NCBI GenBank assembly: GCA_002269645.1
Contig: NIVC01002033.1
Location: 124,001 to 188,000, forward strand
DNA length: 64,000 nt
Direction: 5' to 3'
DNA from: Macrostomum lignano
Taxonomy: Eukaryota
Positions 951 to 63,993 of this stretch are shown piece by piece. The notes under the pieces are model-generated. The model saw only the letters and a list, made by a program, of their open reading frames with translations. It was not told the origin of the DNA and made no database searches. How positions within the stretch are numbered: position 1 is the stretch's first letter; every line of letters starts with the position of its first letter. A program made the translations under genes and the position numbers.

Positions 951-2214
951 TCAGAAACAAATTGTTACACATGCGCTATTGTGCTACTATAAGTAAATAA
1001 AACAAAAATTTTCCGATTTTTTTAGAAATTGCAAGAAATTGTGAACTTTAAACTTTTTTTTACTACTATTAGTAGGCGTATAAAATTCTTCTACTAATAA
1101 ACAAAATCTACAGTGTTTTTTCTTTATTTTCGTTCTGTATTTGAAAAACAGTTGCGCTTATTTTAGTTTAGTAGATCAAAACATTGTGTAGAATCTCTCT
1201 TTATTGCCCTTTTAAGAGCACTAACATCTTAACTATATCTGTGATTTTTTTCAATAAACTGCCGTCCTTGTGATAAAAAGTGGGGTTATTTTTTATTATT
1301 TCTACTCACCAGTAGGCTATCGAGAATCTCGCTCTTATTTTCTGTTTCTGCAGCAGTCCCGTCTTCCCGGCTAAAATTCGTGTCTCAGAAGTTTCCTGCT
1401 GCGTTAATTAACGAATTAATTTGTTATAAACTGATTTTAGAATCTCGCCTTAAATGAATTCCGTCTTTTTTGTCCGCTTTATTTTTATTACTATTTAAGT
1501 TTCAAAAATACATATATATTGTCTCAACTTTTTAGACTCAAGTGACTCCTGTTTTTTTCATTAATTCTCTTCTGACACCCTACAGGGCTTCTAGCCACAC
1601 TCAGTGAACAGATACAGTGAACAGATTTTCTGCAAGTAGTTGATGATGATGGAGCATCCCGTTAAAAAACGTTGCCATGATCAGAATTGCTAGGACAACT
1701 AGAAAGTTGGACTGCTGTAAGCCTAGGTGCTTTCTCAGTGGTTAGGGCTAGTTGCTAACTAACTGGCTATGTAACAGGTTAATTAAGCTTTTAGAGATTA
1801 AAATTGCTTGTATACCTTGTCTACCATTAGCAATTATCACTTGGCTTAATCCCTAGCACAATAGGGTGCTACTTGGGGCGTCTGTTAGGCAGTTTTGCAA
1901 AAGCAAAGGGTAAAATGCAGATGACAAGTTGAGCTCCAGCACTTAGCAGGCGGCTCTATAAGAGAATAGAGATATTAGCCGAGGCAACACACCAGCTGCT
2001 CAGGGCGTTTGCGATTAAGTTTCTCTATTCAAGCGCACATGCCAAGTTGAATATTTTCCACCCATAGCTATGCCTTAATACCTTGCCTTTCTATTCTTCC
2101 GTCTCTATTCTTTGCATGGCATAGGAGACCGCCGTGGCTTCATCGTGTCATAGCTAGTAAATTTCTTCTTCATTCTCTCCCTGCGAGACTCGCCTAGCCG
2201 CTATTGAGTCGAAG

Positions 2215-25499: not shown

Positions 25500-26483
25500 A
25501 TGTCTTCGTCAACGTCGTCAAGTAGCAGCGTCGGTAGCGGCGTCTCCAGCCCGGTCGGCAAGCTGCTCCTAGCTGGTACGTGCGCCTGCGTCGCCGACGC
25601 CCTGACTTTTCCCATGGACACCGTGAAGGTGCGCATGCAGATGGCACCAGCCGGCAGCGGCTTCCTCGCCACCCTGCGTCACGTGGCCGTCAGCGAGGGC
25701 CCCGCCGGCCTGTACGGCGGCCTGGGCGCCGGACTGCAACGTCAGTTCGCCTTCGCCTCGATTCGAATCGGATTCTACGAGCCGGTGAAACAAGCCTACA
25801 TGGGCCAGCTGGGTATGCGGCATCAGGACGCCTCCACCACGGCCCTGATGGGCGTCCGACTTCTGGCCGGCCTCACCACGGGCGCCTTGGCCGTCTGCTG
25901 CGCCCAGCCAACCGACGTCGTCAAGGTGCGCATGCAAGGCTCGGCCGGCCGCTACCCCGGCTGCGCCGCCGCCTATTCAACAATCTGGCGATCTGAGGGC
26001 CTCGCGGGCCTGTGGAAAGGCACCGGGCCCAGCGTCGCTCGCAACGCCATCGTCAACTGCGCGGAGGTCGTGTCCTACGACACCATCAAGACCTACATGG
26101 TGGCCCGCCTGGGCATGCCGAACGCTGTCGGCACGCACTTCCTGGCCGGCCTGTGCAGCGGCTTCATCGCCACCCTGGTCGCCTCCCCGGTGGACGTGGT
26201 GAAGACCCGCCTGATGAGCGCCAGGCCGGAGGAGCGCGCCGGAGTCGTCAGCGTCACGCGCGGCCTCTACCAGCAGAGCGGCCTGCGCGGCTTCTACAAA
26301 GGCTTCGGGCCGAGCTTCGCCCGCATCGCCGGCTGGAACATCCTCATGTTCGTGCTGTACGAGAAGGCCAAATCCGCGCTAGAAGTCGCCCCGGCGCTGC
26401 CGTCGCCTCATCTGGTGGCGGTTGCGGCTGTCGCGGCTTCCACGGGTGCCCCGGCTGTGCAGCCCAAGAAGCTGCAGCTTTGA
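25500..26483 (+). CDS. UCP2: Mitochondrial uncoupling protein, UCP1/2/3-type (SLC25 family), intronless, 327 aa
   Basis: Three carrier signatures FPMDTVKVRMQ, QPTDVVKVRMQ and SPVDVVKTRLM. UCP1-3-like segments GLQRQFAFASIRIGFYEPVK, PSVARNAIVNCAEVVSYDTIK and GFYKGFGPSFARIAGWNILMFVLYEK. The symbol means 'UCP2-like', not proven orthology. Confidence 0.85.
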   Translation: MSSSTSSSSSVGSGVSSPVGKLLLAGTCACVADALTFPMDTVKVRMQMAPAGSGFLATLRHVAVSEGPAGLYGGLGAGLQRQFAFASIRIGFYEPVKQAYMGQLGMRHQDASTTALMGVRLLAGLTTGALAVCCAQPTDVVKVRMQGSAGRYPGCAAAYSTIWRSEGLAGLWKGTGPSVARNAIVNCAEVVSYDTIKTYMVARLGMPNAVGTHFLAGLCSGFIATLVASPVDVVKTRLMSARPEERAGVVSVTRGLYQQSGLRGFYKGFGPSFARIAGWNILMFVLYEKAKSALEVAPALPSPHLVAVAAVAASTGAPAVQPKKLQL

Positions 26484-27945: not shown

Positions 27946-28299
27946 CCTAGGCTGCAACCCGTGAAGGAATTTCCAATATTACTCGTAGATTTTAAAATAC
28001 CCTTCTGAATGAGTTTTGGAGGGCAAATTGAGAGGTGCTTGATTGATGCTTTCACTGGGAAAAATTTGTACTTTAAAATTAAATCCAATCAATATTTTCA
28101 ATTGGCATTCTTTTGTATTGGATATTGCTTATGTTGTCAATGCCAATCATTGAAGTGTCAGTCATTTTCAGCAAACATTATTTGCTATTGAACCAGCTCA
28201 ACTTGTCGGATTTGCATTTCTCATAAGTCTTCTATTTCAGTCCTGTCATATATTGGAATTGGAATTTTGTCTGACACAGAGAACACAATTACAGACAGG

Positions 28300-28316
28300 C
28301 AGACAGGCAGGCAGGC

Positions 28317-28383
<67 letters not shown>

Positions 28384-28448
28384 GAGACATAGAGACAGAC
28401 AGACAGACAGACAGACTGACAGAGAGACATAGAGACAGACAGACAGAC

Positions 28449-28517
<69 letters not shown>

Positions 28518-28518
28518 T

Positions 28519-28593
<75 letters not shown>

Positions 28594-28594
28594 T

Positions 28595-28681
<87 letters not shown>

Positions 28682-28744
28682 AACAGACAGACACTAAGAC
28701 ACTAAGACAGACGGACAGGCAGACAGACAAACAGACAGACACTA

Positions 28745-28781
<37 letters not shown>

Positions 28782-28784
28782 CTA

Positions 28785-28817
<33 letters not shown>

Positions 28818-28825
28818 GGCAGGCA
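28300..28825. repeat. (AGAC)n microsatellite
   Basis: Direct; abuts the stop-codon position of paralog 1. Confidence 0.97.
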
Positions 28826-29471
28826 GCTCAGCACAGCCCCGGCACCAGCTGCAGCACCACCCGGCCCTGCTGGCTGCCGCTGTTGCCGCCGGTGACGCCG
28901 CTGCAGTCGAGGCCGTCGCAGGCGGAGCCGCCGCCCCTCCGGCGTGATTCAGGCCGAGACCCGCGCCGCCTCCGCTGAAGCCGCCGCCCGCGCCAGCGGC
29001 GCCTCGACGGCCACCGCCGCTGCCGCCGGCGCCGCCGCCTCCTCCAAAGCCGCCGACGCCGGTGTTGCCGGAGCCGGCAAGGCCGCCAGTCCAGCCTTCG
29101 GCGGGACCGCCGCCGCCGTCTCCATCATCAGTGCTCAGTCTCTGATTTATTGGCCCGCCCAGCCAGCCGGCGCCGCAGCCTCCGTGGTGGCTGTTTCTTG
29201 GGGTCCTGCTGGGGTCGTTGAAGCCCGGGCCTCCGTTGGTGCCACCAAAGCCGGCGTTATCACTATAAGAAGTTGAGTCGCTTCCGTTGGAGCCTGACTG
29301 ACCGGAAATGCCTGGTCGATGAAAACATTGGCAAGGAAAACCCGTAGAAGCGTCTCGAACTAATTATAAATGCCCGGCGGGAAATTCGAGGGCCGTGTGA
29401 GCTTTCTGTGTGAGCGTGTGTAGGAGCTTATATGTAATATGTGTTTGGGAATAAGGGAATGCACAGATGGT

Positions 29472-30987
29472 CCCGACGAAGTTCCCAACGAGGTGCTCAG
29501 ACTGCCCAAGGTCGCCCAGGAGATCGCCAGGGTGATCAACAACGTTCTCGATACTGGCGTCGCACCTCCGGAGTGGACCCGAGCACATATCGTCGGAATC
29601 CCCAAGAAGCCGGGCACCAACAAGATTGAAGAACATCGGGGCATCTCCCTGATGTCCTGTGCCGCCAAGCTGCACAACAAGCTGCTACTGTCGCGCTTGC
29701 AGCCAGTGCTGGACCCTTACCTGCGGTACGAGCAGAATGGGTTCCGGCCACGACGTGGTACAGTCACGCAAATTCTGGCGCTCCGGAGAATTATCGAGGA
29801 ATCGCGCATTCGCCAGTCGGACCTTTTCTGTCTGTTCATCGACTTCCTGAAGGCTTTCGACTCGGTGGCTCGAGGCGTGATTCCACTAGTTCTCCGAGCC
29901 TACAACGTGCCAGAGAAACTGATTGCAGCAGTGATGGCGCTCTACCACGACACGCACGCTGCTGTGATCACACCTGACGGCCTTTCCGACTTCTTCACCA
30001 CCTCATCCGGAGTCCTGCAAGGAGACACCCTCGCTCCCTTCCTGTTCATCCTCATCTTGGACTGGGTGCTGCGGACAGGACTACCGGACAACTCGGACGG
30101 CTACATCCTATGCAGGCGAACGAGCAGCCGGCACCCGGAGAAGCGGCTGGCAGTCCTCGGATATGCTGATGACCTCGCCCTGCTGGCATCCACTGCTGCT
30201 GGTGCTCAACGCCTCCTCGACGGCCTAGCTGCTGCCGCTGCGAAGGTTGGCCTTAAGATCAACGCCAAGAAGACGGAGGTCCTGACTGTGCCAGCCGATC
30301 TGCCAGCGGTCATCCGCCTTCCCAGCATGGACAGCGCAACGGCAGCACCGCTCCCCCGATGTGAGCAGTTCCGGTACCTTGGTGGTCTCGTGCCCAGCGT
30401 CCAGGAGGACCTGCGGCGTCGCAGAGGGCTTGCGTGGGCGGCTTTCCGCTCAGTGCGCATCGTGCTCCAAAGCGACGCCCTGCCAGACCAGCTGAGAACC
30501 AGACTGTTCCAGGCGGTGGTGGAAACGGTGCTCTTCTACAACGCCGAGACCTGGACCATGACGGATGTGCTGGAGCGCCAGCTGGACGCGGCGCACTCCA
30601 GCCTGCTGCGCGCTGCCTTCAGCGTGCACCGTCACGCCGAACACGTCACCAACCAGGCTCTCTACCAGCGGGCCAAGCTGAGCCCTCCCAGCGTGACCCT
30701 GCGACAGCGCCGCCTAAAGCTGGCGGGCCACGTCATTCGCGCCGAGTCCTACTGCCCGGAGCCGCTGCAGGAGGTCTTGCTGTACACGCAGCAGGGCCCG
30801 TTCCGGCGGGGGCAGGCGCGGACCCGGAGGTTCGTCGACTGTCTGACAGAAGACGCCAGGGCGCCTGATCAGATCAATGGCGCTACCTTCATCAGAGACT
30901 GCGCAGCTAAGCGTGCTTTTTGACAATGTCCCCCCCTTTCCTGACCACTTGTGGCCGGTGGCCATTGTATTTATTGTATTGTATTGT
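29472..30987 (+). mobile_element. 5'-truncated non-LTR retrotransposon (RTE-like LINE), RT ORF intact to stop 30923, antisense inside intron 3 of paralog 1
   Basis: RT motifs EQNGFR, FIDFLKAFDSV, GVLQGDTLAPFLF and YADD. 3' (TTGTA)n tail 30964-30988. 9-bp TSD ACAGATGGT at 29463-29471 and 30988-30996. No endonuclease domain. Confidence 0.9.
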
Positions 30988-31769
30988 ACAGATGGTGGGA
31001 CGATGTCGCCGAAGGCGTTGCACCAGGGTGTCCAAAGCCCACCTGCAAGCTGCAGATGTTACTTTTATTGGTTGGTCACTTTCTCATTCTGCTTCTGACA
31101 CTCGATCCCTGCAGCAGGAATATCTTAAAACTTTATTTCAGTATGTTTAATTATACTTAAGTGGAGTAAGAGCGTTCATGTCACTGGCACAGCAAATTTT
31201 CATAGATCTATCTTACATTTCATAAACAGTTTTAGTATTTTTCCTGAGTTCATTCAGTGCGTCTGGCTGTAGTGTAGAGTAGAGGTCAATAAGTGCCGGC
31301 AAGCGATAATTCAAAGCCGTTTTCTTTGGGTTGTGTCTCGACTAAAGAGCACCTGGAGCTGCTCATGCATTCCACATTGGGAGGCCAGTTCAAAGCAATT
31401 TCACTTGCCATTTCGTCTAAGGGACGCCCCGCCGCCGCCTCCCGCGGCGACCAGAAGGCGACCGTCGGCGCCGCCGACGAACACGAAGCTGCCGCCGCCA
31501 CCGCCTCCGCCGCAGTCGCCGTTGACGGCCGGTCCGCCGGCCTGACCGACCAAAACCGACAGCCGGACGCCGGCAGTCAGGTTGAAGCGGCCCGACATCG
31601 AGGCTCCGCTACCGCCAGCTGTGCCTGCGAAGCTGTTGGAGCCGCCTGCAGCGCCCCGGGCCTCGATTTGGTAGCAGCCGGTCAGCTCGACTGTCAGCTG
31701 CTGGATGGAGCCGTCGCGGCCCGAGCTCGAGTCTGGGAGTCAGTGAGGGTCAGCGGGGTCAGCTGAGTT

Positions 31770-32210
31770 GCTGTGAGAATGAGCTGGCATGAGAATGAGC
31801 TGGCATGAGAGTGAGCTGGTGTGAGAATGAGCTGGCATGAGAATGAGCTGGCATGAGAATGAGCTGGCATGAGAGTGAGCAGGCGTGAGAATGAGCTGGT
31901 ATGAGAATGAGCTGGCATGAGAATGAGCTGGCATGAGAATGGGCTGGCATGAGAATGAGATGGCATGAAAATGAGCTGGCATGAGAATGAGCTGGCATGA
32001 GAATGAGCTGGCATGAGAATGAGCTGGCATAAGAATTAGCTGGCATGAGAATGAGCTGGTATGAGAGTGAGTTGGCATCAGAATGCGCTGGCATAAGAAT
32101 TAGCTGGCATGGGAATGAGCTGGCATGAGAATGAGCTGGCATGAGAATGAGATGGCATGAGAGTGAGCTGGCGTGAGAATGAGCTGGCATCAGAATGAGC
32201 TGGCATGAGA
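31770..32210. repeat. Intronic minisatellite, 16-bp unit GAGAATGAGCTGGCAT (paralog 1)
   Basis: Tandem repetition; homologous array at 36655-36970. Confidence 0.95.
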
Positions 32211-32609
32211 ATGAGAACTTGAAACTGCGCCGGCGGCACGCACTTGAGAACTTGAGAACGAGTTCTCACGCACTTGAGAACTCGTGCGTGATGTTGAGCC
32301 TCCTCGACTCGATGACGCTGTCGATGTCGACCGCCTTCCACACCTCGGCGCCGGCCTCGGATCCCAGCGACCTCCACGCGTGACTGCGCGGCGGTCCGGC
32401 AGTCCGCGAGGCGTCCTCGACGAAGAGCAGCTGGCAGACGCGGCTGGCCTGCAGCAGGCTGACTGCCGCACAGCGCCTCGACCAGCAGCTGAGCAGGCAG
32501 TCTTGGATGGAGGCTGAGCTGGGCTCGCTGATGATGAGGCTGCTGACGGTCGGGTCGAGCAGGACTGGGCCGGAGGAGTTGATGAAGCGGCTGCAGCTGG
32601 CGAGCGCCT

Positions 32610-33095
32610 GCGTGAGGGAGGCTGGGACTGGCGGGCCGGGTTTGGGATAAGCGGCTGCGTGAGGGAGGCTGGGACTGGCGGGGCGGGTATGGGATGAGCG
32701 GCTGCGTGAGGGAGGCTGGGACTGGCGTGGGGGGGGGTTTGGGATGAGCGGCTGCGTGAGGGAGGCTGAGACTGGCGGGGCGGGTTTAGGATGAGCGGCT
32801 GCGTGAGGGAGGCTGGGACTTGCGGGGCGGGTTTGGGATGAGCGGCTGCGTGAGGGAGGCTGGGACTGGCGTGGGGGGGGGTTGGGATGAGCGGCTGCGT
32901 GAGGGAGGCTGGGACTGGCGGGGCAAGTTTGGGATGAGCGGCTGCGTGAGGGAGGCTGGGACTGGCGGGGCGGGTTTGGGATGAGTGGCTGCGTGAGGGA
33001 GGCTGGGACTGGTGGGGCGGGTTTGGGATCAGCGGCTGCGTGAGGGAAGCTGAGACTGGCGTGGGGGGGGGGTTGGGATGAGCGGCTTCGTGAGG
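32610..33095. repeat. 47-bp GC-rich minisatellite overlapping the exon acceptor (paralog 1)
   Basis: Unit GCGTGAGGGAGGCTGGGACTGGCGGGGCGGGTTTGGGATGAGCGGCT. Confidence 0.92.
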
Positions 33096-33950
33096 GAGTC
33101 TGGTACTGACTAATACATAACTTTAAATTTTCATAAATTAGATTCTTCTGATTGACTCAGTCTGCAAGATAAAAATTTCAATGCGAACTATATCATATCA
33201 GTTCAGAGCTCACCAGTCAAGATCCCGCAGGCAATGATTATAATTACTGGTAGGGCTCGCATTCTGCACCTGCTAGTTGCTATTCACAGTTTGAGCTTCT
33301 GCTTAAACTTTTCTGTCAGCAACTGGGAAAAGTTATAGCAGGCATATCGCAATTTCCTAATCGTTCCATCATTGGATGCCGGATTCATTGGACGAAATAT
33401 TTCTGGCAGTTGTTAAATTCAGTCCGGGGTACTTTTTTATAGCAAACAGTCTAAGGAAATGACTGCTGAGACGCAAGGAGGCCTCAGAATTGGAGCCTAC
33501 ATTCACAAATCTGTTCCCATGCTTCGCACATTGTTGCAGTTCTGAATGTGCAGTATTTTCTCTCTTTGGATAAAGCATTTTTCTCAGTTTTGTGTAAATA
33601 AGAAGCGCTCTTTCCAACATGAAACGTATTAATTAGCGCAGCTCCACCGATTTTATGAGGAACACGCGTGTCTTCCCTAACATAGCATCTTCTCCAGCAA
33701 TCAACGAAGACCGGAGGGGTGCTCTATCCTCCAAAGCAGACGATGGAGATTACACTTCAATAACTTCAACTTCAACTTCAATAACTGTTCCTGAATCTTC
33801 TTGGGCTTCTGCTTCTCTTACTCGAGGCTTCGCGACCCTCGGGATTCTTTCTGCTCTCACAAGGTCTATGGTATTGGTATACGGCATTGGTATATTCCCA
33901 CCAGATTTACGGGGCAGAAATGTCACAGAAATCTTCAGTCTTCATTAGTA

Positions 33951-34513
33951 TCGCTTTTGACTATCGAAATGGGAATTTGGACAATCAAAACGGGACGCCA
34001 TAGACATTAAAGCCACGCCACAGACTCGGGCCGCTTGGGAATACACAACCAGAATGTGGAATGAACAATCAAAATGGGAAAAATCCATTCGCCCAATTTA
34101 ATGTATTTTTATATCTCAGGGCCACTGGAATATTTAGAATTGAACAAAGTGTACCGGAAGCAAAACAAAAGTAATTCAGAACTCCTTGAGCGTCTGGAAA
34201 TAATTTTCATCGAGTTTCTCAACCAATTGAAATGGGCTGTAAATTACAGAGGGCTGTAAAATCTCAGTCCGATTCCCGTTTTGAATCGCTTCTTTCCATA
34301 TTGAATTTCCAAAGTTTTAGTCTATGGCCAAGTCTCCCTAAGTAGACTTTGCTCAAGGAGTTCTATAATTAGGAATTAGGATGCTCATTATGGAACTCCT
34401 TGACTTTGCTAAACTGCTTAAGTCCATGACTAGGGTGTGATCTGTGGCCTGGCTTGAATGTCTATGGCGTCCTGTTTTGAATGTCCAAATTTCCATTTGA
34501 TTGTCAAAAGCGA
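33951..34513. mobile_element. Possible MITE/foldback element with ~75-bp inverted repeats
   Basis: 33951-34025 TCGCTTTTGACTATCGAAATGGGAATTTGGACAATCAAAACGGGACGCCATAGACATT... is the near reverse complement of 34441-34513. Confidence 0.5.
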
Positions 34514-35414
34514 CAGCAAATTGGATCATAAACAAAGAGTTTATTTTTAGAACGGCTGAACTTCAAAGTAATCACGGACTTATTAGATGCTGAGATGAAG
34601 ATTTCCATTGAAGCCCAAATTCGGGATTCGACATCATCTAAAAGCCATAGACTAAAACTGCGAAAAATAAAGCTTGGAACTTGGCTAAGTGCTTCTTTTT
34701 GCGGGCATTATGGCGGCTACATCATGCTCGATTCGTGTTATAAAGAAGACGTCTGCAACTCCGTTATCACGTGACCTCATCAGCCAACTATACTTATGAC
34801 TAGAAGTTGAAGCTGCAGTTGTTAACGATCCCGACCAGCTGATGAGGCTGGCCTGTCACGGCTCCTGTTGTGGCTTCTGACAGGATTAACGCGATCAATT
34901 GGTGGAAGAGACAGTTACTCCGAGATCCGCAAGATCTTCAAGCAAATTGTCCAATTCTGGATTCAATGCGTATAGCTGCATCCAACGCCAGGAACCGGTA
35001 ATCCAGTCCATCGGTAACACTAGTCTGAGTTGCCAGCAAAGAAAGATAGAAAGCCCATCTCTTCGCGATGCAAATCTGCTGATATCACCACCAAAGTATG
35101 CAGTTCATGTCGAGCAAAGGCATGGCAATTTGCGTCGGATAAACAACGCAGAGAAATGTTGAAACACGACCCTAAATATACTTCTCTCAACTGACGAGCT
35201 GCAAATGAACCAGAAACTCTACCATAGCCTATGAAAATAATTCCATAGACTTAACAGTTATCCAATTTATATGTGTGCCAAGAGTTTCAGTCGTATTGAC
35301 TGGAGTATCCACACTCAGTTTCAGAATATTGGCTCTATAACTTGAGCGGATTCTCCTGAGAAAAGCGTACCTTCGAGCAACTTCTCAGTTCAATCATACC
35401 AACCTGAGTAAATT

Positions 35415-35702
35415 CTCAGTGTCAGGAGGTGGGCTCATGCTCAGTGTCAGGAGGTGGGCTCATGCCTCATGCTCAGTGTCAGGAGGTGGCATGTCAGTGT
35501 CAGGAGATGGGCTCATGCTCAGTGTCAGGAGGTGGCATGTCAGTGTCAGGAGATGGGCTCATGCTCAGTGTCAGGAGGTGGCATGTCAGTGTCAGGAGAT
35601 GGGCTCATGCTCAGTGTCAGGAGGTGGCATGTCAGTGTCAGGAGGTGGCATGTCAGTGTCAGGAGGTGGCATGTCAGTGTCAGGAGGTGGCATGTCAGTG
35701 TC
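35415..35702. repeat. Minisatellite, 21-bp unit GTCAGTGTCAGGAGGTGGCAT
   Basis: Tandem repetition just 3' of the paralog 2 stop. Confidence 0.9.
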
Positions 35703-36654
35703 ATGAACTGCCTGCCTCAGCACAGCCCCGGCACCAGCTGCACCACCACCCGGCCCTGCTGGCTGCCGCTGTTGCCGCCAGTGACGCCGCTGCAGTCGAA
35801 GCCGTCGCAGAAGGAGCCGCCGCCCCCTCCTGCGTGGTTCTGGCCGGTACCTGCGCCACCTCCGCTAAAGCCGCCGCCCGCGCCGCCCGCGCCAATCAGG
35901 CCCTCACCGCTGCCGCCGGCGCCGCCGCCTCCGCCGAAGCCGCCCAAGCCGGTGTTTCCCAGGCCAGCGAGGCCGCCGACCCAGCCTTCGGCAGAGCTGC
36001 CGCCGCCGTCTCCGTCATTGGCGCTGCGCCGAGCGTTGACCGGCTTTCCCAGCCAGCCGGCGCCGCAGCCGCCGTGATTAACCAACCGGAAGGTTTTCTG
36101 TGGCCTGTTGGAGCCGGGATTTCCGTCGGCACCGCCGATGCCCACAGCCACGGCAGCGGCTGTGGAGTCCGTGCCGTTGGGGCCCCGCTGCCCGGCGACT
36201 CTTGAAGAGCGACATTTGTCAGTTCCTCATCTACAAGCCAACTGCAGTGCGCCTACCTGTGGCATCGATCAGCATTGAGGAACCGTTCGCACCTGACTGG
36301 CTGTAGGACGCCCCACCGCCGCCTCCCGCGGCGACCAGAAGGCGACCGTCGGCGCCGCCGACGAACAAGAAGCTGCCGCCGCCGCCGCCTCCGCCGCAGT
36401 CGCCGTTGACGGCCGGTCCGCCGGCCTGACCGACCAAAACCGACAGCCGGACGCCGGCAGTCAGGTTGAAGCGGCCCGACATCGAGGCTCCGCTACCGCC
36501 AGCTGTGCCTGCGAAGCTATTGGAGCCGCCTGCAGCGCCCCGGGCCTCGATTTGGTAGCAGCCGGTCAGCTCGACTGTCAGCTGCTGGATGGAGCCGCTG
36601 CGGCCCGAGCTCGAGTCTGGGAGTCAGTGAGGGTCAGCGGGGTCAGCTGAGTTG

Positions 36655-36970
36655 CTGTGAGAATGAGCTGGCATGAGAATGAGCTGGTATGAGAATGAGC
36701 TGGCATGAGAATGAGCTGGCATGAGAATGAGCTGGCATGAGAATGAGCTGGCATGAGAATGAGCTGGCATGAGAATGAGCTGGCATGAGAATGAGCTGGG
36801 ATGAGAATGAGCTGGCATGAGAATGAGCTGGCATGAGAATGAGCTGGCGTGAGAATGAGCTGGCATGAGAATGAGCTGACATGGGAATGAGCTGGCATGA
36901 GAATGAGCTGGCATGAGAATGAGCTGGCATGAGAATGAGCTGGCATGAGAATGAGCTGGCATGAGAATGA
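36655..36970. repeat. Intronic minisatellite, 16-bp unit GAGAATGAGCTGGCAT (paralog 2)
   Basis: Tandem repetition. Confidence 0.95.
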
Positions 36971-37324
36971 GAACTTGGGACTGGACTCACTTGAGAACTC
37001 GTGCGTGATGTTGAGCCTCCTCGACTCGATGATGCTGTCGATGTCGACCGCCTTTCACACCTCGGCGCCGGCCTCGGATCCCAGCGACCTCCACGCGTGA
37101 CTGCCCGGCGGTCCGGCAGTCCGCGAGGCGTCCTCGACGAAGAGCAGCTGGCAGACGCGGCTGGCCCGCAGCAGGCTGACTGCCGCACAGCGCCTCGACC
37201 AGCAGCTGAGCAGGCAGTCTTGGATGGAGGCTGAGCTGGGCTCGCTGATGATGAGGCTGCTGACGGTCGGGTCGAGCAGGACTGGGCCGGAGGAGTTGAT
37301 GAAGCGGCTGCAGCTGGCGAGCGC

Positions 37325-38080
37325 CTGCGTGAGGGAGGCTGGGACTGGCGGGGCGGGTTTGGGATGAGCGGATGCGTGAGGGAGGCTGGGACTGGCGGGG
37401 CGGGTTTGGGATGAGCGGATGCGTGAGGGAGGCTGGGACTGGCGGGGCGGGTATGGGATGAGCGGCTGCGTGAGGGAGGCTGGGACTGGCGGGGCGGGTT
37501 TGGGATGAGCGGCTGCGTGAGGGAGGCTGGGACTGGCGGGGCGGGTTTGGGATGAGCGGCTGCGTGAGAAATGCTGGGACTGGCGGGGCGGGTTTGGGAT
37601 GAGCGGATGCGTGAGGGAGGCTGGGACTGGCGGGGCGGGTATGGGATGAGCGGCTGCGTGAGGGAGGCTGGGACTGGCGGGGCGGGTTTGGGATGAGCGG
37701 CTGCGTGAGGGAGGCTGGGACTGGCGGGGCGGGTTTGGGATGAGCGGCTGCGTGAGAAATGCTGGGACTGGCGGGGCGGGTTTGGGATGAGCGGATGCGT
37801 GAGGGAGGCTGGGACTGGCGGGGCGGGTTTGGGATGAGCGGCTGCGTGAGGGAGGCTGGGACTGGCGGGGCGGGTTTGGGATGAGCGGATGCGTGAGGGA
37901 GGCTGGGACTGGCGGGGCGGGTTTGGGATGAGCGGATGCGTGAGGGAGGCTGGGACTGGCGGGGCGGGTTTGGGATGAGCGGATGCGTGAGGGAGGCTGG
38001 GACTGGCGGGGCGGGTTTGGGATGAGCGCCTGCGTGAGGGAGGCTGGGACTGGCGGGGCGGGTTTAGGATGAGCGGATGC
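37325..38080. repeat. 47-bp GC-rich minisatellite in intron 1 of paralog 2
   Basis: About 16 tandem units; same family as 32610-33095. Confidence 0.95.
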
Positions 38081-38696
38081 AGGTGGCGACTTAGCAACAG
38101 AGCTTTTCAGCTTACCTATCGTCAGCAGGCAGAAACAGGCAAGAGTTATTGGTGCCATTTTGATTTACAAGATCTTAAATATTTTTCTTAAAAAGCGACT
38201 CTTTCCGAAGTAATCCTAGCAACTAAGCTGTTTGATAGAGACCATTAATTCAGTGTTAGAATTTTTTCGGCCAAGCCCAAGACTAATCTTCTCAAAGAGA
38301 CCCCTGACTTTTATGGTGATGCCTCTGTGGTGGGGAAAACTCAGTTTCACCCCTCATCACATGCTAAAACAGAAGTTGCATACAGATAATTACTTTTAAC
38401 TTAATTGGCCTTTTCTGAGAGCCTGGGACAGCCCCGCCTGCCGATAGGTAAAATGCGAATTTTCATTTATCGCTTACTTGGGATCGCTGAGAGGCTTTGA
38501 GGGATTGGATGCATTGGCACGAGGCTGTATCTGTGACAGTTGGGCAATTCGGTTGCCATGGCAACTGCCTACTGAGCACTCAGCTAGGTTATTGTCTCAG
38601 CTGGTCATATAAGGTATCGAGGTGTTGAGCTGTAAGAGTAAAAAGTTAGTTTGATTAATCTTTTTTATTTACTCTGCAAATTTGTAGCTGATAGAC

Positions 38697-39371: not shown

Positions 39372-41930
39372 CTACGAGCGTAGTTCTTTATATTCTTTAT
39401 ACGTAGTTCTTGGTCGCAAAACCGGCGTCGGGACTGGGTCGTCCGCGTCGATGACGACTGGCTTCAGCCTCTCGACTGACACCCGGTCGCGGCGAGTGCC
39501 CAGGTCCAGCAGGAAAGCTTTGGCGTCCCGCTCGAGGACCTTGAACGGGCCGTCGTAAGGTCGCTGCAGTGGAGGGCGGTGGCCGTCGCGCCGGATTAAG
39601 ACGAACTGGCAGGCGTCGAGGGCGGCGGGCCAGGCGGTGGGGCGGCTGCCGTGACGAGACGTCAGCGTCGGCCGGAATGCCTGGACGGCACCGCGGAGCC
39701 GGGCGGGGAACTGGTCGTGGTCGCCGGGCGGCGGGCTGGGCTGCAGGCACTCCGCCGGCAGGTCCTCCTTAGGGGCCGTCCGGATGCCAAGCAGCACCCA
39801 GGGCAGCTCGCTGACCCAGGCTGGTCCGGCCAGCCGCCCCATGAGGCACGGCCCCACCAGGTTGACGTGCACCTGGGCGAAGCGCTGGTCCGGGACGCGG
39901 ATATTGCCAACCGGGGCGGAGAAGTGCCGCTGCACCGTGGCCGTCTGACAAGCGACGCAGGACCGGGCCCACCGGCTGACGTCCTTGTTCATGCCGGCCC
40001 ACACAAACTTGGCGGCCACGAGGCGCCGCGTGCTGCGGATGGACGGGTGGGCGAGGCCGTGGATGGCATCGAAGACGCTGCGGCGGAAATCCGGTGGCAC
40101 TAACGGGCGCGACCGGCCCGTGGAGATGTCGCAGAGCAGGGCGACACCGGGGCTGAACTGCAGCGGGCTCTAGTTGTATGCTGGCGTCGGCCTGACTGGC
40201 CGTATCGGGCGCCTGCGCCTGCGCCATTGCCGTAAAATCCACTGCACCAAAGAGACCGTGCAGCGGGACAGCGCGTCTGCGACCGAGTTTTCCTTCCGTG
40301 CTGGATGTCCGTGGTGAACTCGGACACGTAGGCCAGGTGGCGCTGCTGCCGGGCGGACCACGGGTCGGACATCTTGGACATGGCGGCGACCAGTGGCTTA
40401 TAGTCCGTGAAAGCAGCGAATGTGCGGCCCTCGAGGAAATAGCGAACCGCCGCCAGGTACAAGGCGAGCAGCTCGCAGTCGAACGCGCTGTACTTCTGCT
40501 CGGGCGGGCGGAGCTGCCGGCTGAAGAAGGCAAACGGCTGTCAGGCGCCGCCAACCCGCTGCTCGAGCGCCGCACGGACTGCGGTATTGGAGGCGTCGTA
40601 TGGCCGCGGGTGCGCCAGCATGGCGGCGGAGGCCAGCGCCCGCTTCGCTCCGTCGAAAGCGGCGGTCAGCTCGGGCGTCCACCGGACGAACTTCTCCTTG
40701 CCGGCCATGGCCGCATGGATGGGGCGCAGCAGCTGGGCGGCGCGCGGCACGAAGCGGTGGTAGAAATTCACCATGCCGGCGAACTCCTGCAGGCCCTTTA
40801 GCGTGCCGCTGGCGACTTTAGCGGGCAGCGGCACGGCCCCTTGGGCGCTGATCCGGTGGCCGAGGAAGTCGATCTCGCTGCGGCCGAACCCGCACTTTGC
40901 CGGATTGACGATAAGGCCGTTGTCGGCCAGGCGCTGGAACAGCGTCCACAGGTGCTCCAGGTGCTGCTGCGGGCTGCGGCTGGTGACCAGGAAGTCGTCG
41001 ATGTAGTCGAAAACGAAGTCCAGGTCTTGGCAGACGCAGTACACCAGCCAATATTCGGCGTTCTTGAGGCCGAACAGCATTCGCAGGAACTCGAGAAGAG
41101 GCCAAACGGGGTGGTGACTGCGGTCTTGGTACGTCAACTGTGGCCACGGGCACCTGGTGGTAGCCGCGGACCAGGTCGATCTTGGAGAAGATCGAGCAGC
41201 CGGCCAGGCGCGCTGAGAAGTCCTGGATGTGCGGCACCGGGTAGTGGTCGGGCACCATGGCGTCGTTGAGCCGCCTGAAGTCGCCGCGGGGCCGCCAGAG
41301 GCCTTTGGCACCATATGCAACGGCGAGGACCACGGGCTGTTGGACCGGCGCACGATGCCGAGCTGCTCCAGGAGCCGGAACTCCTCCTTGGCCACCGCCA
41401 GCTTGTCCGGCGGGCCCTGCGTCGGGATGTGGTGCTCCACCACGTGTCGTGGCTCAGCCCGCTGGAAACTGGGCTCGGTGAGGGCGGGGAACTCGGCCAG
41501 CAGCCGGTTGTATGGGTCCGCAGCGGCGGCTGCGGCGAGCTGCAGTCCGGGCCCCGCGCCGTCCAGCAGGTGCACACTGGCGAGCGAGCGGGCGTCCAGG
41601 TGGCGTCGGTGCGACAGGTCCACCAGCAGGCCGTGGTGCCGCAGGAAGTCGGTCAGCCGGCCGGCTGTCCCAGAGCTTGTCCGCCTGCTGCGCTGCTGCC
41701 CGGGGGTCCGCGAAACTGACGGTTGTCATGGCCATGCGTACCTCCGGTGGCAGCTGTTGGCGGAACAGTTCCTCGAACAGCAGGCAGGGGCGGTGGTTCC
41801 CCAGCAGGGCGAGCATCTCGTCTATCAACTCGGACGGCCGCCGGTCGCCAAGGCCGGACATGCTGAGCAGGCGGCTGGCCCGCTGCTGAGGAGTCAAATC
41901 GAAAGTGCTGTTGAGGCGCTCCTTTAGCTG
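39372..41930 (-). mobile_element. Decayed Ty3/gypsy retrotransposon (gag-RT-RNaseH-integrase fragments, frameshifted, internally deleted, no LTRs seen)
   Basis: Gag QRASRLLSMSGLGDRRPSEL; RT WSSPLHMVPK, DFRRLN, FSKIDLVRGYHQVP, YIDD; RNase H DASNTAV, KYSAFDCELLA, TDYKPL; integrase HGLAHPSIRST...CVACQ and PYDGPFKVLER. Fragments lie in different frames. Confidence 0.9.
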
Positions 41931-47161: not shown

Positions 47162-47706
47162 ATGCTACCGCAGCCACACCTGACATCCAGCTCACTTCAT
47201 CGGAGGTTGAGACTCTGGGACTGACGAATTCAACTCTGAACTCTGACTCCTGACGGCATAATTATTGACTGATCAGTTTAACAAAATATAACAACATGAA
47301 CTCTGTTTCTCAGCAGAACTATAAGCTTTGTCTGATTTACCAGTTTCCCAAGTCGCCAACAGTACAGTAGGCGTAAGTACCTAGGGCTTATCTGAGCAGA
47401 TATTCATTGATTGTAACTTATTTAAGCCTAAATTCTGATGCTGACTCGATGACATATATAGACGCTAGAGAGCTTCGAAGTTCTAAGGAAAACATCGACG
47501 GCTGAATTTTTGAAGTATGTTTCGAAGAAGTAAGAAGTTATTAAGTGATTTATCACAGGTATAACGCCCATTCTGCCTCTCCGGTGTTGAGAATGTGGAG
47601 CACTTCATCCGTGAATGCCCCGGCCCGCCTTTACTCAGGACAGGCGCACCTTCCTCGTGGCCCAAGACCGGACCTTTCTGATGTTTTCAGGCCAGAGTAT
47701 TTCTGC

Positions 47707-48088
<382 letters not shown>

Positions 48089-50062
48089 GCAAGGACCACT
48101 TCGTTATAGAAGGATGTTTACACTCTCGATTCGTGTAAAAATAGTTGAAGGGGAATGAAGGCTGATTTTCGTTGTCGTATACTTTGCTGGGCCAAGCCGG
48201 TTTTGGAAATAGCGTCCAATTTTTTTGACCAATTACCCGGGCCGACTAGCACAATAATTCTAGTCTAATTTCGATCGCGTACTTTGAGAATAATTAAAAT
48301 AGCAAATTAAAGAGTAAATTAAAATAGCAAATAACAAATAGAAATACAGTGTAAAAACATGCATGAAATAGCAACAAGTCTCGGTTCTCGACAGAGAATT
48401 TCTATGAAAAAATTCGACATTCGACACCGCGTACAATATATTCTTATAAAACATCTACATAGTAGAGTACAGCTGTATAATTCCATGTATATTTCAATAT
48501 CTTATAAGTAATTAAATAGACAAAGATAAGATTAAATCGAAATTTCGATCTAAAAATCGAGAGCTATTTTGCGGAGATTTTAAAGCTTCTGGGGTTTAAC
48601 TAATATGTACAGTCGTGTGGTATCATCTAAGGAATGAGGGTTAGTTTAATAAAATTGATAAAAGTGCAAGTTGAAAAAAGTGGTTAATTAGCTTTTATTA
48701 TTAACTAGACATATTTTTTTAAATAAGCATTTGTGTGATTTTGTTTTAGTGTTATACCTCTAGCTGTTACTGTCAACAATTATTTTAACACGAAACATAA
48801 AAAATTTTTTTCAAAACGTTCCTCAGCCTAGACTAATCTAAATCTTTCAAATTAACAAGCCATCTCACAGAGATTTTGATTGAAGGCGATGCAGCCCAGT
48901 ACAAATTTCATTGAAATTCTAAGCAATCATAGAACATTTACCGAAGACAAAATAATCCATAATCTTTTCTAAATAAGTTAAAACTAACCATGATCACGCG
49001 ATCATGATCATGAATCCATGGTCATGATTTTTACTTAAACATGATTGTAATTTAACGCTTCACGGTCAGGGATTGTATTAGTGACTTTTAATTGTGATTA
49101 GAAATGTTATGTTTTTTTTAATCTTAAATATACGTTTCTAAGCTGCATATTAAGGTGCATATTAATCTCAAAGTACATAGGCGTTGTTTTTTTCGATACC
49201 GTATTTTTCATTTTAAGCCTGCTGTGAGTAATTTTCGAGTGTACACAATTACACAAAGAATGTAAAATGGTCTGTCAGTATCTATCTATCTTATTAACTA
49301 AAGTGCCAGACACTGTCAGCTATATAGTATATTCAAAAAGTTTACATTGTGTAAGATGCACTTTAAATTAAATAAGTATATAATTGACGTCTGAAAGAGT
49401 ATGAATGAATAAACTTGAAATATGCTTATATGAATAATTTATCTTGAGAAAAAGAAAATTAAATGTATCTAAAAGTAACCTATAAGTAAAGCATAGACTT
49501 TTCTATAGCCAAACTAATAAATATATGCGTTTAAAGATTCGTTTAAGCCAAAATGTTTCTTGCAAGACTTCAAATAAAACATAAAAGAACATAAAAGATG
49601 CAGAAGAAGCTAACTTTGAAAAAAAGAAGAAACCCATATACTAAAAATGAAAATATCTTTGCTATAACTGTTTTATCAGATAGACTTTCTTTTTTGTAAT
49701 TTTAATATATGTCCACTTTTATAAAGAATTCTGATCAGATAGAGTTATATTTCTTCTCCACCATTCTTACCAGAAAAAAACCAACACTAAAAAAGTTTTT
49801 GTACTTTAAACAATCATTTAAACTATATTATACTCCCTAAAATTATAGCACAGATGAGTTAAATTGTATTTGATTTTTTAAGAATAAATGTATCAAAATA
49901 TTTTATATCTTTCTATTTAATAACTATTATATTATGCTATACAACAATTTACCTTTATCTTAAACTATTAATTACGATTCAATTTATTGCATGCTTAGAA
50001 TCTAACTCACAATCACAATCTAAAAGCAATCGCTTTGTAAGCAGGGCAGACACAAGTCGGCC

Positions 50063-63993
<13,931 letters not shown>

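What the first reader, a model, noticed from the sequence alone, without database searches (positions are those of the whole stretch)
28828..38158. Tandem secreted 'kinase-less ALK/LTK ectodomain' proteins: signal peptide + PAN/apple-like + glycine-rich domain
Seen: two minus-strand paralogs whose spliced products read PAN-like Cys module, then GSIQQLTVELTGCYQIEARGAAGG..FNLTAGVRLSVLVGQAGG..GGGGGGGSF..LLVAAGGGGG..GWLG..GFGGGG..GGGFSGG..GGGSF..GRVVVQL, and stop with no transmembrane or kinase domain; the signal-peptide exon is visible only in paralog 2. Established: this motif order is that of the ALK/LTK ligand-binding TNF-like/glycine-rich (polyglycine II) module. Inference: a stand-alone secreted GRD family that could act as ligand trap, lectin-like or mucus/adhesive protein; I know of no functional description.
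Basis: partly seen in the sequence, partly recalled or inferred. Interest (0 to 1): 0.7.

Follow-up and report, generated by a model that had tools for sequence, protein, structure and literature searches.

The report
Tandem secreted PAN plus glycine-rich-domain genes
Two neighbouring flatworm (Macrostomum lignano) genes encode secreted proteins whose main domain is the glycine-rich binding module of the human ALK/LTK receptors without any kinase; the module is common in phages, bacteria and corals, nobody knows what these versions do, and each copy here carries one disabling mutation.

Summary
Two minus-strand, four-exon paralogs lie in tandem in Macrostomum lignano DNA. Each reads signal peptide, PAN/apple-like module, then a TNF-like/glycine-rich domain (Pfam PF12810, ALK_LTK_GRD), then a stop. 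There is no transmembrane segment, and no kinase motif anywhere in the 64 kb window.

A family profile matches the LTK, ALK and SCD-2 ectodomains (E 2e-23 to 3e-14). An AlphaFold model of a 47%-identical paralog retrieves only ALK/LTK/SCD-2 structures (Foldseek E 1e-10 to 1e-6).

- Paralog 1 also has a signal-peptide exon (33262-33214).
- Paralog 2 has an in-frame TGA at a conserved Trp.
- Paralog 1 has a 1-bp frameshift near its 3' end and a LINE-like RT ORF in a 2.1-kb GC-AG intron.
- The 5' halves are homogenised (Ks about 0), while exon 4 is old (Ks 0.62, Ka/Ks 0.34).

"Kinase-less ALK" is misleading. The domain family is large (9,212 representative clusters) and occurs in phages, giant viruses, bacteria and corals. 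The flatworm proteins are much closer to coral PAN+GRD proteins than to ALK. UniProt already labels near-identical proteins "Apple domain-containing". No function is known; a secreted binding or recognition protein is the best inference. This is a new member of a known kind, of modest interest.

The parts
38116..38158 (-). Paralog 2 exon 1: ATG plus signal-peptide core MAPITLACFCLLTI; donor TAG|GTAAGC, phase 1
   Evidence: This is the only hydrophobic 19-residue window in the protein.
37319..38080 (-). 47-bp minisatellite (16.2 copies) filling intron 1 of paralog 2. It is open in all three minus-strand frames, so ORF 37055-38158 reads straight through it.
   Evidence: Each unit holds a phase-1 acceptor CCGCCAG|TC, and the last one lies at 37345/37344.
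36991..37344 (-). Paralog 2 exon 2: PAN/apple-like module (C-x3-C-x4-C-x11-C) plus linker up to ...NITHEFS; donor CAA|GTGAGT, phase 1
37055..37057 (-). In-frame TGA in paralog 2 exon 2 (codon 111), at the conserved Trp of the motif (E/Q/K)VWK
   Evidence: Paralog 1 has TGG at this position.
36658..36971 (-). 16-bp minisatellite in intron 2 of paralog 2
36293..36616 (-). Paralog 2 exon 3: start of the TNF-like/GRD module (NSSSGRSGSIQQLTVELTGCYQIEARGAAGG ... AAGGGGGASYSQS); donor CAG|GTGCGA, phase 1
35717..36198 (-). Paralog 2 exon 4: rest of the GRD and the closing beta strands (…GGFGGGGG…GGGFSGGG…GGGGGSFCDGFDCSGVTGGN…GRVVVQLVPGLC), then TGA
33214..33262 (-). It is not homologous to paralog 2 exon 1.
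32602..33108 (-). 47-bp minisatellite (10.6 copies) in intron 1 of paralog 1
32274..32627 (-). Paralog 1 exon 2: PAN/apple-like module plus linker, with the Trp codon intact
31774..32215 (-). 16-bp minisatellite in intron 2 of paralog 1
31409..31732 (-). Paralog 1 exon 3: start of the TNF-like/GRD module. The best-fitting donor is the GC type, ATG|GCAAGT, phase 1.
   Evidence: The junction reproduces the family spacing ASLRRNGISGQSGSNGSDS.
29439..30923 (+). 494-aa reverse-transcriptase ORF (LINE-like element) inside the 2,097-bp intron 3 of paralog 1, antisense to the gene
28828..29311 (-). Paralog 1 exon 4: rest of the GRD, then TGA. The G-run at 28934-28937 is one G shorter than in paralog 2, which shifts the frame of the last 36 codons.

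Best explanation
The region holds two tandem members of a multigene family of the flatworm Macrostomum lignano. Each gene has four exons separated by phase-1 introns.

Each encodes a protein of about 400 residues:
- a cleavable signal peptide;
- one PAN/apple-type disulfide module;
- one TNF-like beta-sandwich with an embedded glycine-rich domain (Pfam PF12810, the 'TG' module of ALK/LTK);
- five N-glycosylation sequons and a C-terminal Cys;
- no membrane anchor and no kinase.

Shown here: the domain identities, the gene structure, the absence of TM and kinase parts, family membership, and the lesions.

Inferred: the protein is secreted and acts as a soluble extracellular binding or recognition protein. 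The glycine-rich lattice would serve as a rigid scaffold for a binding surface, as it does in ALK/LTK (cytokine binding) and in phage tail-fibre adhesins (host-receptor binding). The PAN/apple module would add a second protein- or carbohydrate-binding site.

The pair evolves by birth-and-death and gene conversion. Exon 4 is anciently diverged under purifying selection, while exons 2-3 and their introns were recently homogenised. In this assembly each copy carries one disabling lesion, so one or both may be young pseudogenes or carry assembly errors.
For: Organism and family:
- The best hits are 15 M. lignano UniRef clusters, up to 93% identical, several named 'Apple domain-containing protein' and carrying PF12810.

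Gene models:
- All introns are phase 1 with good splice sites. The products align end to end with full-length relatives.

GRD identity:
- Family profile against PDB: LTK 2.2e-23, ALK 1.2e-22, SCD-2 2.9e-14 over profile positions 127-397.
- AlphaFold model of paralog P0008 (47% identical): mean pLDDT 79.5, above 90 through most of the GRD.
- The top 21 Foldseek PDB hits are all ALK/LTK/SCD-2, E 8e-11 to 1.5e-6, target-normalised TM 0.41-0.61.

PAN identity:
- The Cys pattern is conserved.
- The only PDB hits of the N-domain profile are the PAN/apple modules EtMIC5 (E 0.03) and SML-2.
- Foldseek gives HGF N-domain and SML-2 at probability 0.4-0.84.
- The Porites homolog has PF00024 plus PF12810.

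Secreted and kinase-less:
- The only hydrophobic segment is N-terminal.
- The stop codon follows the last conserved strand, where coral homologs also end.
- No kinase motifs occur in any frame of the window.

Binding role of the module elsewhere:
- ALK/LTK-ALKAL complexes are among the PDB hits.
- 77 viral proteins have the fold, including ones named virion structural or tail fibre proteins.
- PHROG 22713 matches at E 4e-27.

Evolution:
- Exon 2 Ks 0; exon 3 Ks 0.07; exon 4 Ks 0.62, Ka 0.21, Ka/Ks 0.34.
- The homology breakpoint lies at 31422/36306.
Against: - No expression or splicing data were available, so the exon models rest on splice consensus and homology only.
- Each copy has a disabling lesion: TGA at 37057-37055 in paralog 2, and a 1-bp deletion at 28934-28937 in paralog 1. 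As assembled, neither encodes the full protein.
- The TM-scores are moderate and the rmsd is 6-7 A.
- The PAN assignment rests on weak scores.
- No ligand, tissue or phenotype is known for any PAN+GRD protein, so the binding function is inferred from other contexts of the module.
- The signal peptide was judged by hydropathy alone.
Confidence: 0.75

Rival explanations
1. Both loci are pseudogenes, decaying copies of a redundant family. What is seen is a relic, not a working secreted protein.
For: - Paralog 2 has an in-frame TGA at a conserved Trp.
- Paralog 1 has a frameshift before its last 36 codons.
- Paralog 1 also has a LINE-like RT ORF in its intron 3, a non-canonical GC donor and a non-homologous exon 1.
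- Many close paralogs exist in the genome.
Against: - There is only one lesion per copy.
- Exon 4 shows Ka/Ks 0.34 over Ks 0.62, so the genes were constrained for most of their history.
- The frameshift lies in a G homopolymer, a typical long-read assembly error.
- Splice sites, N-glycosylation sequons and Cys residues are all retained.
- Copies with those two positions intact exist in UniRef (P0001, P0002 and P0003).
Confidence: 0.4
2. The proteins are soluble decoys (ligand traps) for the ligand of a flatworm ALK-type receptor.
For: They share the fold of the ALK/LTK ligand-binding module and are predicted to be secreted.
Against: - Sequence similarity to ALK is marginal: 16 bits against about 100 bits to coral PAN+GRD proteins.
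- The EGF-like module that follows the GRD in ALK/LTK is absent.
- None of the 259 closest family members has kinase motifs, so no cognate receptor was seen.
- To my knowledge ALKAL ligands are restricted to vertebrates.
- The family is expanded to at least 15 clusters, which is unusual for a decoy.
Confidence: 0.05
3. This is a low-complexity glycine-rich structural protein (loricrin-, cuticle- or PE-PGRS-like), and its likeness to ALK comes from composition alone.
For: - Glycine makes up 33% of the C-terminal 260 residues.
- Databases give relatives names such as 'loricrin-like' and 'PE-PGRS family protein'.
- An unrelated Gly run at 16235-16660 gave a weak tblastn hit.
Against: - The match covers ordered, non-glycine beta strands at both ends (IQ..TV..TG.Y.I.A.GA.GG, L.IVVGQ.G, G.V.I) in the same order as in ALK/LTK.
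- The model is confident (pLDDT above 90) and folds as the TG module.
Confidence: 0.03
4. Alternative gene model for paralog 2: intron 1 is not removed, and the 47-bp repeat is translated as a Pro/Ser-rich stretch of about 250 residues (mucin-like) between the signal peptide and the PAN module.
For: - ORF 37055-38158 is continuous and in frame from the ATG through 16 repeat units into the PAN module.
- Automatic models of paralogs read the repeat as coding (P0003 and P0013).
Against: - The period of 47 is not a multiple of 3.
- Copy number and indels differ between the paralogs.
- In paralog 1 stop codons separate exon 1 from the repeat.
- Both first exons end in strong phase-1 donors, and matching phase-1 acceptors lie at the end of the repeat.
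- Full-length relatives go from signal peptide to PAN within 10-25 residues.
Confidence: 0.1

Closest known systems
ALK / LTK / SCD-2 extracellular TNF-like + glycine-rich ('TG') ligand-binding module (PDB 7NX0, 7N00, 7LRZ, 7LS0, 7LIR)
   Same: - Same order of beta strands and glycine motifs.
- Profile E 2e-23 to 3e-14 across the whole module.
- The only significant PDB fold matches.
- Extracellular location.
   Different: - No EGF-like module, TM helix or kinase, and no MAM/LDLa region.
- A PAN/apple module sits in front instead.
- Pairwise similarity to ALK is marginal (16 bits).
- The long insert with helices seen in the ALK/LTK alignment is absent.
Cnidarian PAN_1 + ALK_LTK_GRD proteins (e.g. 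Porites harrisoni ABFA07_017308, P0019) and related coral GRD proteins
   Same: - Same architecture (PAN then GRD) and the same C-terminal end, GGGGGS(F/Y)C.G..C.GVTGGN...G.V.
- 38-45% identity over about 65% of the query, E 4e-27 to 3e-18.
   Different: - The coral proteins have a 20-residue insert (GDSVEVKGGQSTT...) and an extra 50-residue segment between PAN and GRD.
- Intron positions and phases are not shared: the Porites GRD lies in one exon and its introns are phase 0.
- They too are uncharacterised.
Phage and giant-virus glycine-rich-domain proteins (PHROG 22713; Pam3 gp24 and S16 gp38-type tail-fibre adhesins)
   Same: - TNF-like plus polyglycine-rich fold.
- PHROG 22713 matches at E 4e-27 over residues 122-396.
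- 77 BFVD models match at E <= 0.001, the best with TM 0.65 and rmsd 2.9 A.
- The module serves receptor binding there (PMC9608196).
   Different: - The viral proteins are parts of virion fibres, often trimeric and with other N-terminal domains.
- They have no PAN module, signal peptide or introns.
PAN/apple modules of apicomplexan microneme proteins (EtMIC5 1HKY, SML-2 2YIL) and the HGF N domain
   Same: - Cys spacing C-x3-C-x4/5-C...C.
- These are the only PDB sequence hits of the N-domain profile.
- Weak fold hits.
- These modules bind carbohydrates or proteins outside the cell.
   Different: - Scores are weak (E 0.03; probability 0.4-0.84).
- There is a single copy here, fused to a GRD.
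- Five rather than four or six Cys.

Membership tests
Pfam PF12810 (ALK_LTK_GRD; TNF-like/glycine-rich 'TG' module) | Significant profile match across the whole module | tested here: met
   - Family profile against LTK, ALK and SCD-2 chains: E 2.2e-23, 1.2e-22 and 2.9e-14, profile positions 127-397.
- PF12810 is precomputed on the 93%-identical P0001.
Pfam PF12810 (ALK_LTK_GRD; TNF-like/glycine-rich 'TG' module) | Ordered glycine motifs (GGGGGSF, AAGGGGG, GGFGGGGG, GGG(F/Y)SGGG, GGGGGS) between N- and C-terminal beta strands | tested here: met
   Nearly invariant columns in the 23-sequence alignment. All motifs are present in both paralogs.
Pfam PF12810 (ALK_LTK_GRD; TNF-like/glycine-rich 'TG' module) | Fold: beta-sandwich with an embedded non-helical, non-strand glycine region, similar to solved TG modules | tested here: met
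   - AlphaFold model of paralog P0008 (47% identical): strands at 129-243 and 390-410, with almost no regular secondary structure (three short helical turns, a few isolated bridges) between them at pLDDT above 90.
- The top 21 Foldseek hits are all ALK/LTK/SCD-2.
- The window's own spliced model could not be submitted.
Pfam PF12810 (ALK_LTK_GRD; TNF-like/glycine-rich 'TG' module) | Hexagonal lattice of polyglycine-II helices | not testable with these tools
DSSP shows almost only 'other' for the region.
ALK/LTK receptor tyrosine kinases | Transmembrane helix after the ectodomain | tested here: not met
   - No hydrophobic 19-residue window apart from the signal peptide.
- The stop codon directly follows the last strand.
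ALK/LTK receptor tyrosine kinases | Cytoplasmic tyrosine-kinase domain | tested here: not met
   - No HRD, DFG, P-loop or APE-type motifs in any of the six frames of the 64-kb window.
- None in the 259 closest family proteins apart from spurious Gly-run matches.
ALK/LTK receptor tyrosine kinases | EGF-like module after the GRD; MAM/LDLa region before it (ALK) | tested here: not met
   The protein ends 10 residues after the last strand. The N-terminal part is a single PAN-like module.
PAN/apple domain (PF00024, PROSITE PS50948) | Conserved cysteine framework around a helix packed on a beta sheet | tested here: met
   - C-x3-C-x4-C-x11-C is nearly invariant in the family.
- The model shows strands plus a helix at 54-65 and 78-87, at moderate pLDDT.
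PAN/apple domain (PF00024, PROSITE PS50948) | Significant profile or fold match to known PAN modules | tested here: inconclusive
   - Only weak direct scores: EtMIC5 E 0.03, SML-2 E 8; Foldseek probability 0.4-0.84 to the HGF N domain and SML-2.
- Indirect support: UniProt names the 93%-identical proteins 'Apple domain-containing'.
- PF00024 is on record for the Porites homolog, whose N-domain matches the family N-domain HMM at E 1e-21, although that sequence is itself one of the 10 rows the HMM was built from.
Classical secreted proteins | N-terminal signal peptide, no other membrane anchor | tested here: met
   - Both first exons encode an h-region (Kyte-Doolittle 19-residue mean 2.0-2.4), followed by ...TQA|LASC.
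- There is no C-terminal hydrophobic tail, and there are five NxS/T sequons.
- No dedicated signal-peptide predictor was available.

The most novel reading that the evidence does not exclude
PAN+GRD proteins are an ancient, still uncharacterised family of secreted metazoan recognition proteins, shared by cnidarians and flatworms. They would be the closest free-standing animal relatives of the module that ALK/LTK later used for cytokine binding. In Macrostomum the family would have expanded as a fast-turnover set of soluble receptors, for example for microbes, mucus or adhesion, or mating partners. Studying it could show what the polyglycine-II lattice bound before it was wired to a kinase.
Probability: 0.12. 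Interest if true: 0.6.

Novelty: new member of a known kind. Interest (0 to 1): 0.33.

Why it matters
The ALK/LTK glycine-rich module is usually presented as a structural oddity of two cancer-relevant receptors. This locus is a reminder that the same module is widespread as a stand-alone extracellular domain, and that animals other than vertebrates carry it in secreted proteins paired with a PAN/apple module.

If a ligand were found for these flatworm or coral proteins, it would say something about the ancestral use of the polyglycine-II lattice. For genome annotation it matters in three ways:
- Rule-based names such as 'receptor protein-tyrosine kinase' on these proteins are wrong.
- Gene predictors mis-read the open-frame intronic minisatellites as coding.
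- Both copies here need read-level checking before they are called genes or pseudogenes.

Tried and rejected
I used the M. lignano paralog P0008 instead.
- NCBIfam gave no family for the protein, nor for P0004 and P0013, which UniRef names 'protein kinase domain-containing'. Neither has kinase motifs.
- A third weak tblastn hit at 16235-16660 is a Gly/Pro low-complexity run in a zinc-finger gene region, not a GRD.
- Four literature searches found no functional study: 'PF12810'; Macrostomum with glycine-rich and secreted; Macrostomum with ALK; and ALK_LTK_GRD / Gly_rich. The one paper discussing non-ALK PF12810 proteins says no function can be inferred (PMC4859500). A sea-anemone multi-omics paper only lists Gly_rich and PAN_1 among its abbreviations.
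- Li et al. 2021 (PMC8639777) is not held.
- The comparison of intron positions with the Porites gene showed no shared positions or phases. It therefore says nothing for or against common descent of the architecture.
- Alternative splicing that would skip the TGA in paralog 2 (donor GAG|GTGTGA) needs a phase-0 acceptor and would delete 22 conserved residues. I judged it unlikely.
- TGA read as Trp applies only to flatworm mitochondrial codes, not to this intron-containing nuclear gene (my own knowledge).
- For the searches I replaced the TGA of paralog 2 with Trp, as in paralog 1. For the Ka/Ks codon alignment only, I placed an N at the frameshift of paralog 1.

Full report
**What is there**

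The window is nuclear DNA of the free-living flatworm Macrostomum lignano. The best protein matches to the spliced product are 15 UniRef clusters from that species, the top two 93% identical.

On the minus strand between 38158 and 28828 lie two paralogous genes in tandem. Using splice consensus and alignment to relatives, I built exact models:

| | Exon 1 | Exon 2 | Exon 3 | Exon 4 | Introns |
|---|---|---|---|---|---|
| Paralog 2 | 38158-38116 | 37344-36991 | 36616-36293 | 36198-35717 | 771, 374 and 94 bp, all GT-AG |
| Paralog 1 | 33262-33214 | 32627-32274 | 31732-31409 | 29311-28828 | 586 and 541 bp (GT-AG), 2,097 bp (GC-AG, ATG\|GCAAGT) |

All six introns are phase 1. The products (400 and 403 codons) align end to end with full-length relatives from M. 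lignano and from corals.

**Corrections to the observation**

- Paralog 1 does have a signal-peptide exon, MRALPVIIIIACGILT, with donor CTG|GTGAGC in phase 1. It is not homologous to exon 1 of paralog 2, because the duplicated segment ends at the upstream edge of the 47-bp repeat.
- Paralog 2 has an in-frame TGA at 37057-37055 (codon 111). Paralog 1 has TGG there, and the family has a conserved Trp in the motif VWK.
- Paralog 1 has a four-G run at 28934-28937 where paralog 2 has five. This shifts the frame of the last 36 codons.
- Intron 3 of paralog 1 contains a 494-codon reverse-transcriptase ORF of a LINE-like element on the opposite strand.
- Introns 1 and 2 of both genes are filled by minisatellites of 47 bp and 16 bp.
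- The 47-bp array is open in all three minus-strand frames. In paralog 2 a continuous ORF (37055-38158) therefore runs from the ATG through the array into the PAN module.

I favour the intron reading of that array for four reasons. The period is not a multiple of three. Copy number differs between the paralogs. Both first exons end in strong phase-1 donors, with phase-1 acceptors at the end of the array. Full-length relatives go straight from signal peptide to PAN.

**What the protein is**

*The C-terminal 270 residues.* These are a TNF-like/glycine-rich module of the kind first seen in ALK and LTK.
- A single-sequence search gave only marginal ALK hits (E 0.05, 16 bits).
- A 23-sequence family profile matched LTK (E 2.2e-23), ALK (1.2e-22) and C. 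elegans SCD-2 (2.9e-14) over profile positions 127-397. That span runs from the first beta strands to the closing strand.
- The 93%-identical UniRef protein has a precomputed PF12810 hit. The tool names this family ALK_LTK_GRD.
- The model has mean pLDDT 79.5, above 90 through most of the module. Strands lie at 129-243 and 390-410, with almost no regular secondary structure in the glycine-rich stretch between them.
- Foldseek against the PDB returned 21 significant hits, all ALK, LTK or SCD-2 (E 8e-11 to 1.5e-6, target-normalised TM 0.41-0.61), and then nothing below E 0.4.

*The N-terminal module.* It has the framework C-x3-C-x4-C-x11-C.
- Its profile hits only PAN/apple modules in the PDB: EtMIC5 at E 0.03, and SML-2 more weakly.
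- The model gives weak fold hits to the HGF N domain and SML-2.
- UniProt calls the near-identical proteins 'Apple domain-containing'.
- The Porites harrisoni homolog carries PF00024 together with PF12810.

I therefore accept PAN/apple, with weaker direct support than for the GRD.

*Other features.* The only hydrophobic segment is the N-terminal one. There are five conserved N-glycosylation sequons, 11 Cys in the mature chain and no C-terminal anchor.

**No kinase, no membrane anchor**

- The stop codons follow the last conserved strand, at the position where independent coral proteins also end.
- No kinase motif occurs in any frame of the 64-kb window.
- The neighbours are an uncoupling-protein-like carrier gene and retroelements.
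- Two relatives that UniRef names 'Protein kinase domain-containing' and one named 'receptor protein-tyrosine kinase' have no kinase motifs. These names are rule-based over-annotation, and phage proteins with the same fold carry the same label.

**How it relates to ALK**

The evidence points the other way.
- A profile search of 1.84 billion cluster representatives found 9,212 proteins at E <= 0.001 and 4,373 at E <= 1e-10. Many have several GRD copies in proteins of thousands of residues.
- The fold is common in phage and giant-virus proteins, with 77 BFVD models at E <= 0.001.
- The flatworm protein matches a phage family, PHROG 22713, at E 4e-27.
- The flatworm proteins score about 100 bits against coral PAN+GRD proteins (38-45% identity over 65% of the length) but 16 bits against human ALK.
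- Among the 259 proteins, only about 20 have the PAN-like N-domain. These include the named M. lignano proteins and the Porites protein; the rest come from a library without names or taxonomy.

PAN+GRD is therefore a narrow subfamily, seen here in a flatworm and in a coral, of a broad and mostly non-kinase domain family. Intron positions are not shared with the Porites gene, so I cannot say whether the architecture is inherited or assembled twice.

**Evolution of the pair**

Between the two copies:

| Region | Ks | Ka | Ka/Ks |
|---|---|---|---|
| Exon 2 | 0 (three replacements plus the stop) | 0.012 | not defined |
| Exon 3 | 0.07 | 0.041 | 0.62 |
| Exon 4 | 0.62 | 0.21 | 0.34 |

DNA identity is 92-96% from the 47-bp array down to the end of exon 3. 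It breaks at 31422/36306 and resumes at 84% in exon 4.

The simplest reading is an old tandem duplication kept under purifying selection, followed by recent gene conversion or unequal exchange of the 5' two-thirds, introns included. Each copy then shows a single lesion. These could be very recent pseudogenisation in a highly redundant family, or assembly or allelic variants. The frameshift sits in a G homopolymer. Copies with both of those positions intact exist among the UniRef proteins.

**How it most likely works**

Shown here: the domain content, the lack of TM and kinase parts, the secretory features and the family context.

Inferred: the proteins are secreted, glycosylated, disulfide-bonded soluble binding proteins. 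Wherever the module has been studied it binds something outside the cell: cytokines in ALK/LTK, and host recognition in phage tail-fibre adhesins. PAN/apple modules bind proteins or carbohydrates (my own knowledge of HGF, plasma prekallikrein and apicomplexan microneme lectins). An odd number of Cys, with a conserved Cys at the very C-terminus in the flatworm proteins, hints at covalent pairing, but that is speculation.

The family's expansion, tandem arrangement, conversion and lesions fit an environment-facing role such as immunity, mucus or adhesion, or reproduction. Nothing here discriminates among these. The 'ligand trap' idea has no support.

**What is known**

I found no functional study of any non-receptor PF12810 protein. 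The one paper that discusses such proteins says that no hint of function can be drawn from the sequence (PMC4859500).

**Verdict**

This is a new member of a known, uncharacterised kind, already auto-annotated in UniProt and Pfam. Interest is modest at 0.33. It would rise if a ligand or phenotype were found, or if the cnidarian-flatworm PAN+GRD family proved to be the animal precursor of the ALK ligand-binding module.

Noticed in passing
window 25500-26483 (+): Intronless 327-codon ORF for a mitochondrial uncoupling-protein-like carrier (PDB UCP2 E 1e-74, UCP1 2e-63). It lies about 2.3 kb beyond the 3' end of paralog 1.
   Followed up: partly
window 29439-30923 (+): Intact 494-codon reverse-transcriptase ORF of a LINE-like element inside intron 3 of paralog 1, antisense to it. 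A similar RT tail is fused upstream of a PAN+GRD unit in the unrelated gene model P0135.
   Followed up: partly
window 39372-41623 (-) and 57906-62071 (+): Retroelement pol fragments (integrase and RT) directly upstream of paralog 2. Further on there is a Gypsy-like element with gag (CCHC knuckles) and a 1,121-codon pol ORF.
   Followed up: no
window 37319-38080 and 32602-33108: The 47-bp intronic minisatellite has no stop codon in any of the three minus-strand frames. It therefore reads as a 47-residue Pro/Ser-rich protein repeat, and automatic gene models of paralogs (P0003, P0013) translate it.
   Followed up: partly
window 28291-28826 and 47635-48109: Long (ACAG)n microsatellites. The first (134 copies) starts right after the stop codon of paralog 1, so the frameshifted reading of that gene runs on into it as (CLSV)n.
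   Followed up: no
window 285-14109 (+): Several coiled-coil-type ORF pieces (285-950, 2215-2736, 5401-5874, 10895-12454, 12273-12824, 13648-14109). They look like exons of one large gene separated by introns full of minisatellites.
   Followed up: no
window 15954-17821 (+): C2H2 zinc-finger ORFs with long poly-Pro/Gly runs. The run at 16235-16660 gave a spurious weak match to the glycine-rich domain.
   Followed up: yes
homologs P0004, P0013, P0014 (M. lignano) and BFVD phage entries: Kinase-less GRD proteins are named 'Protein kinase domain-containing protein' or 'receptor protein-tyrosine kinase' in UniProt/UniRef, including phage proteins. This is a systematic rule-based mis-annotation tied to the ALK/LTK GRD signature.
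   Followed up: partly
L001 10001-13388 (Porites harrisoni, GCA_040938025.2): The coral PAN+GRD gene has three exons with phase-0 introns and an extra 50-residue middle exon (…SCEEIKMSEGQVVASKKYWMICINQDMAVLAYCNM…). By eye it recalls the start of a fibrillar-collagen C-terminal or fibrinogen-like domain. Not tested.
   Followed up: no
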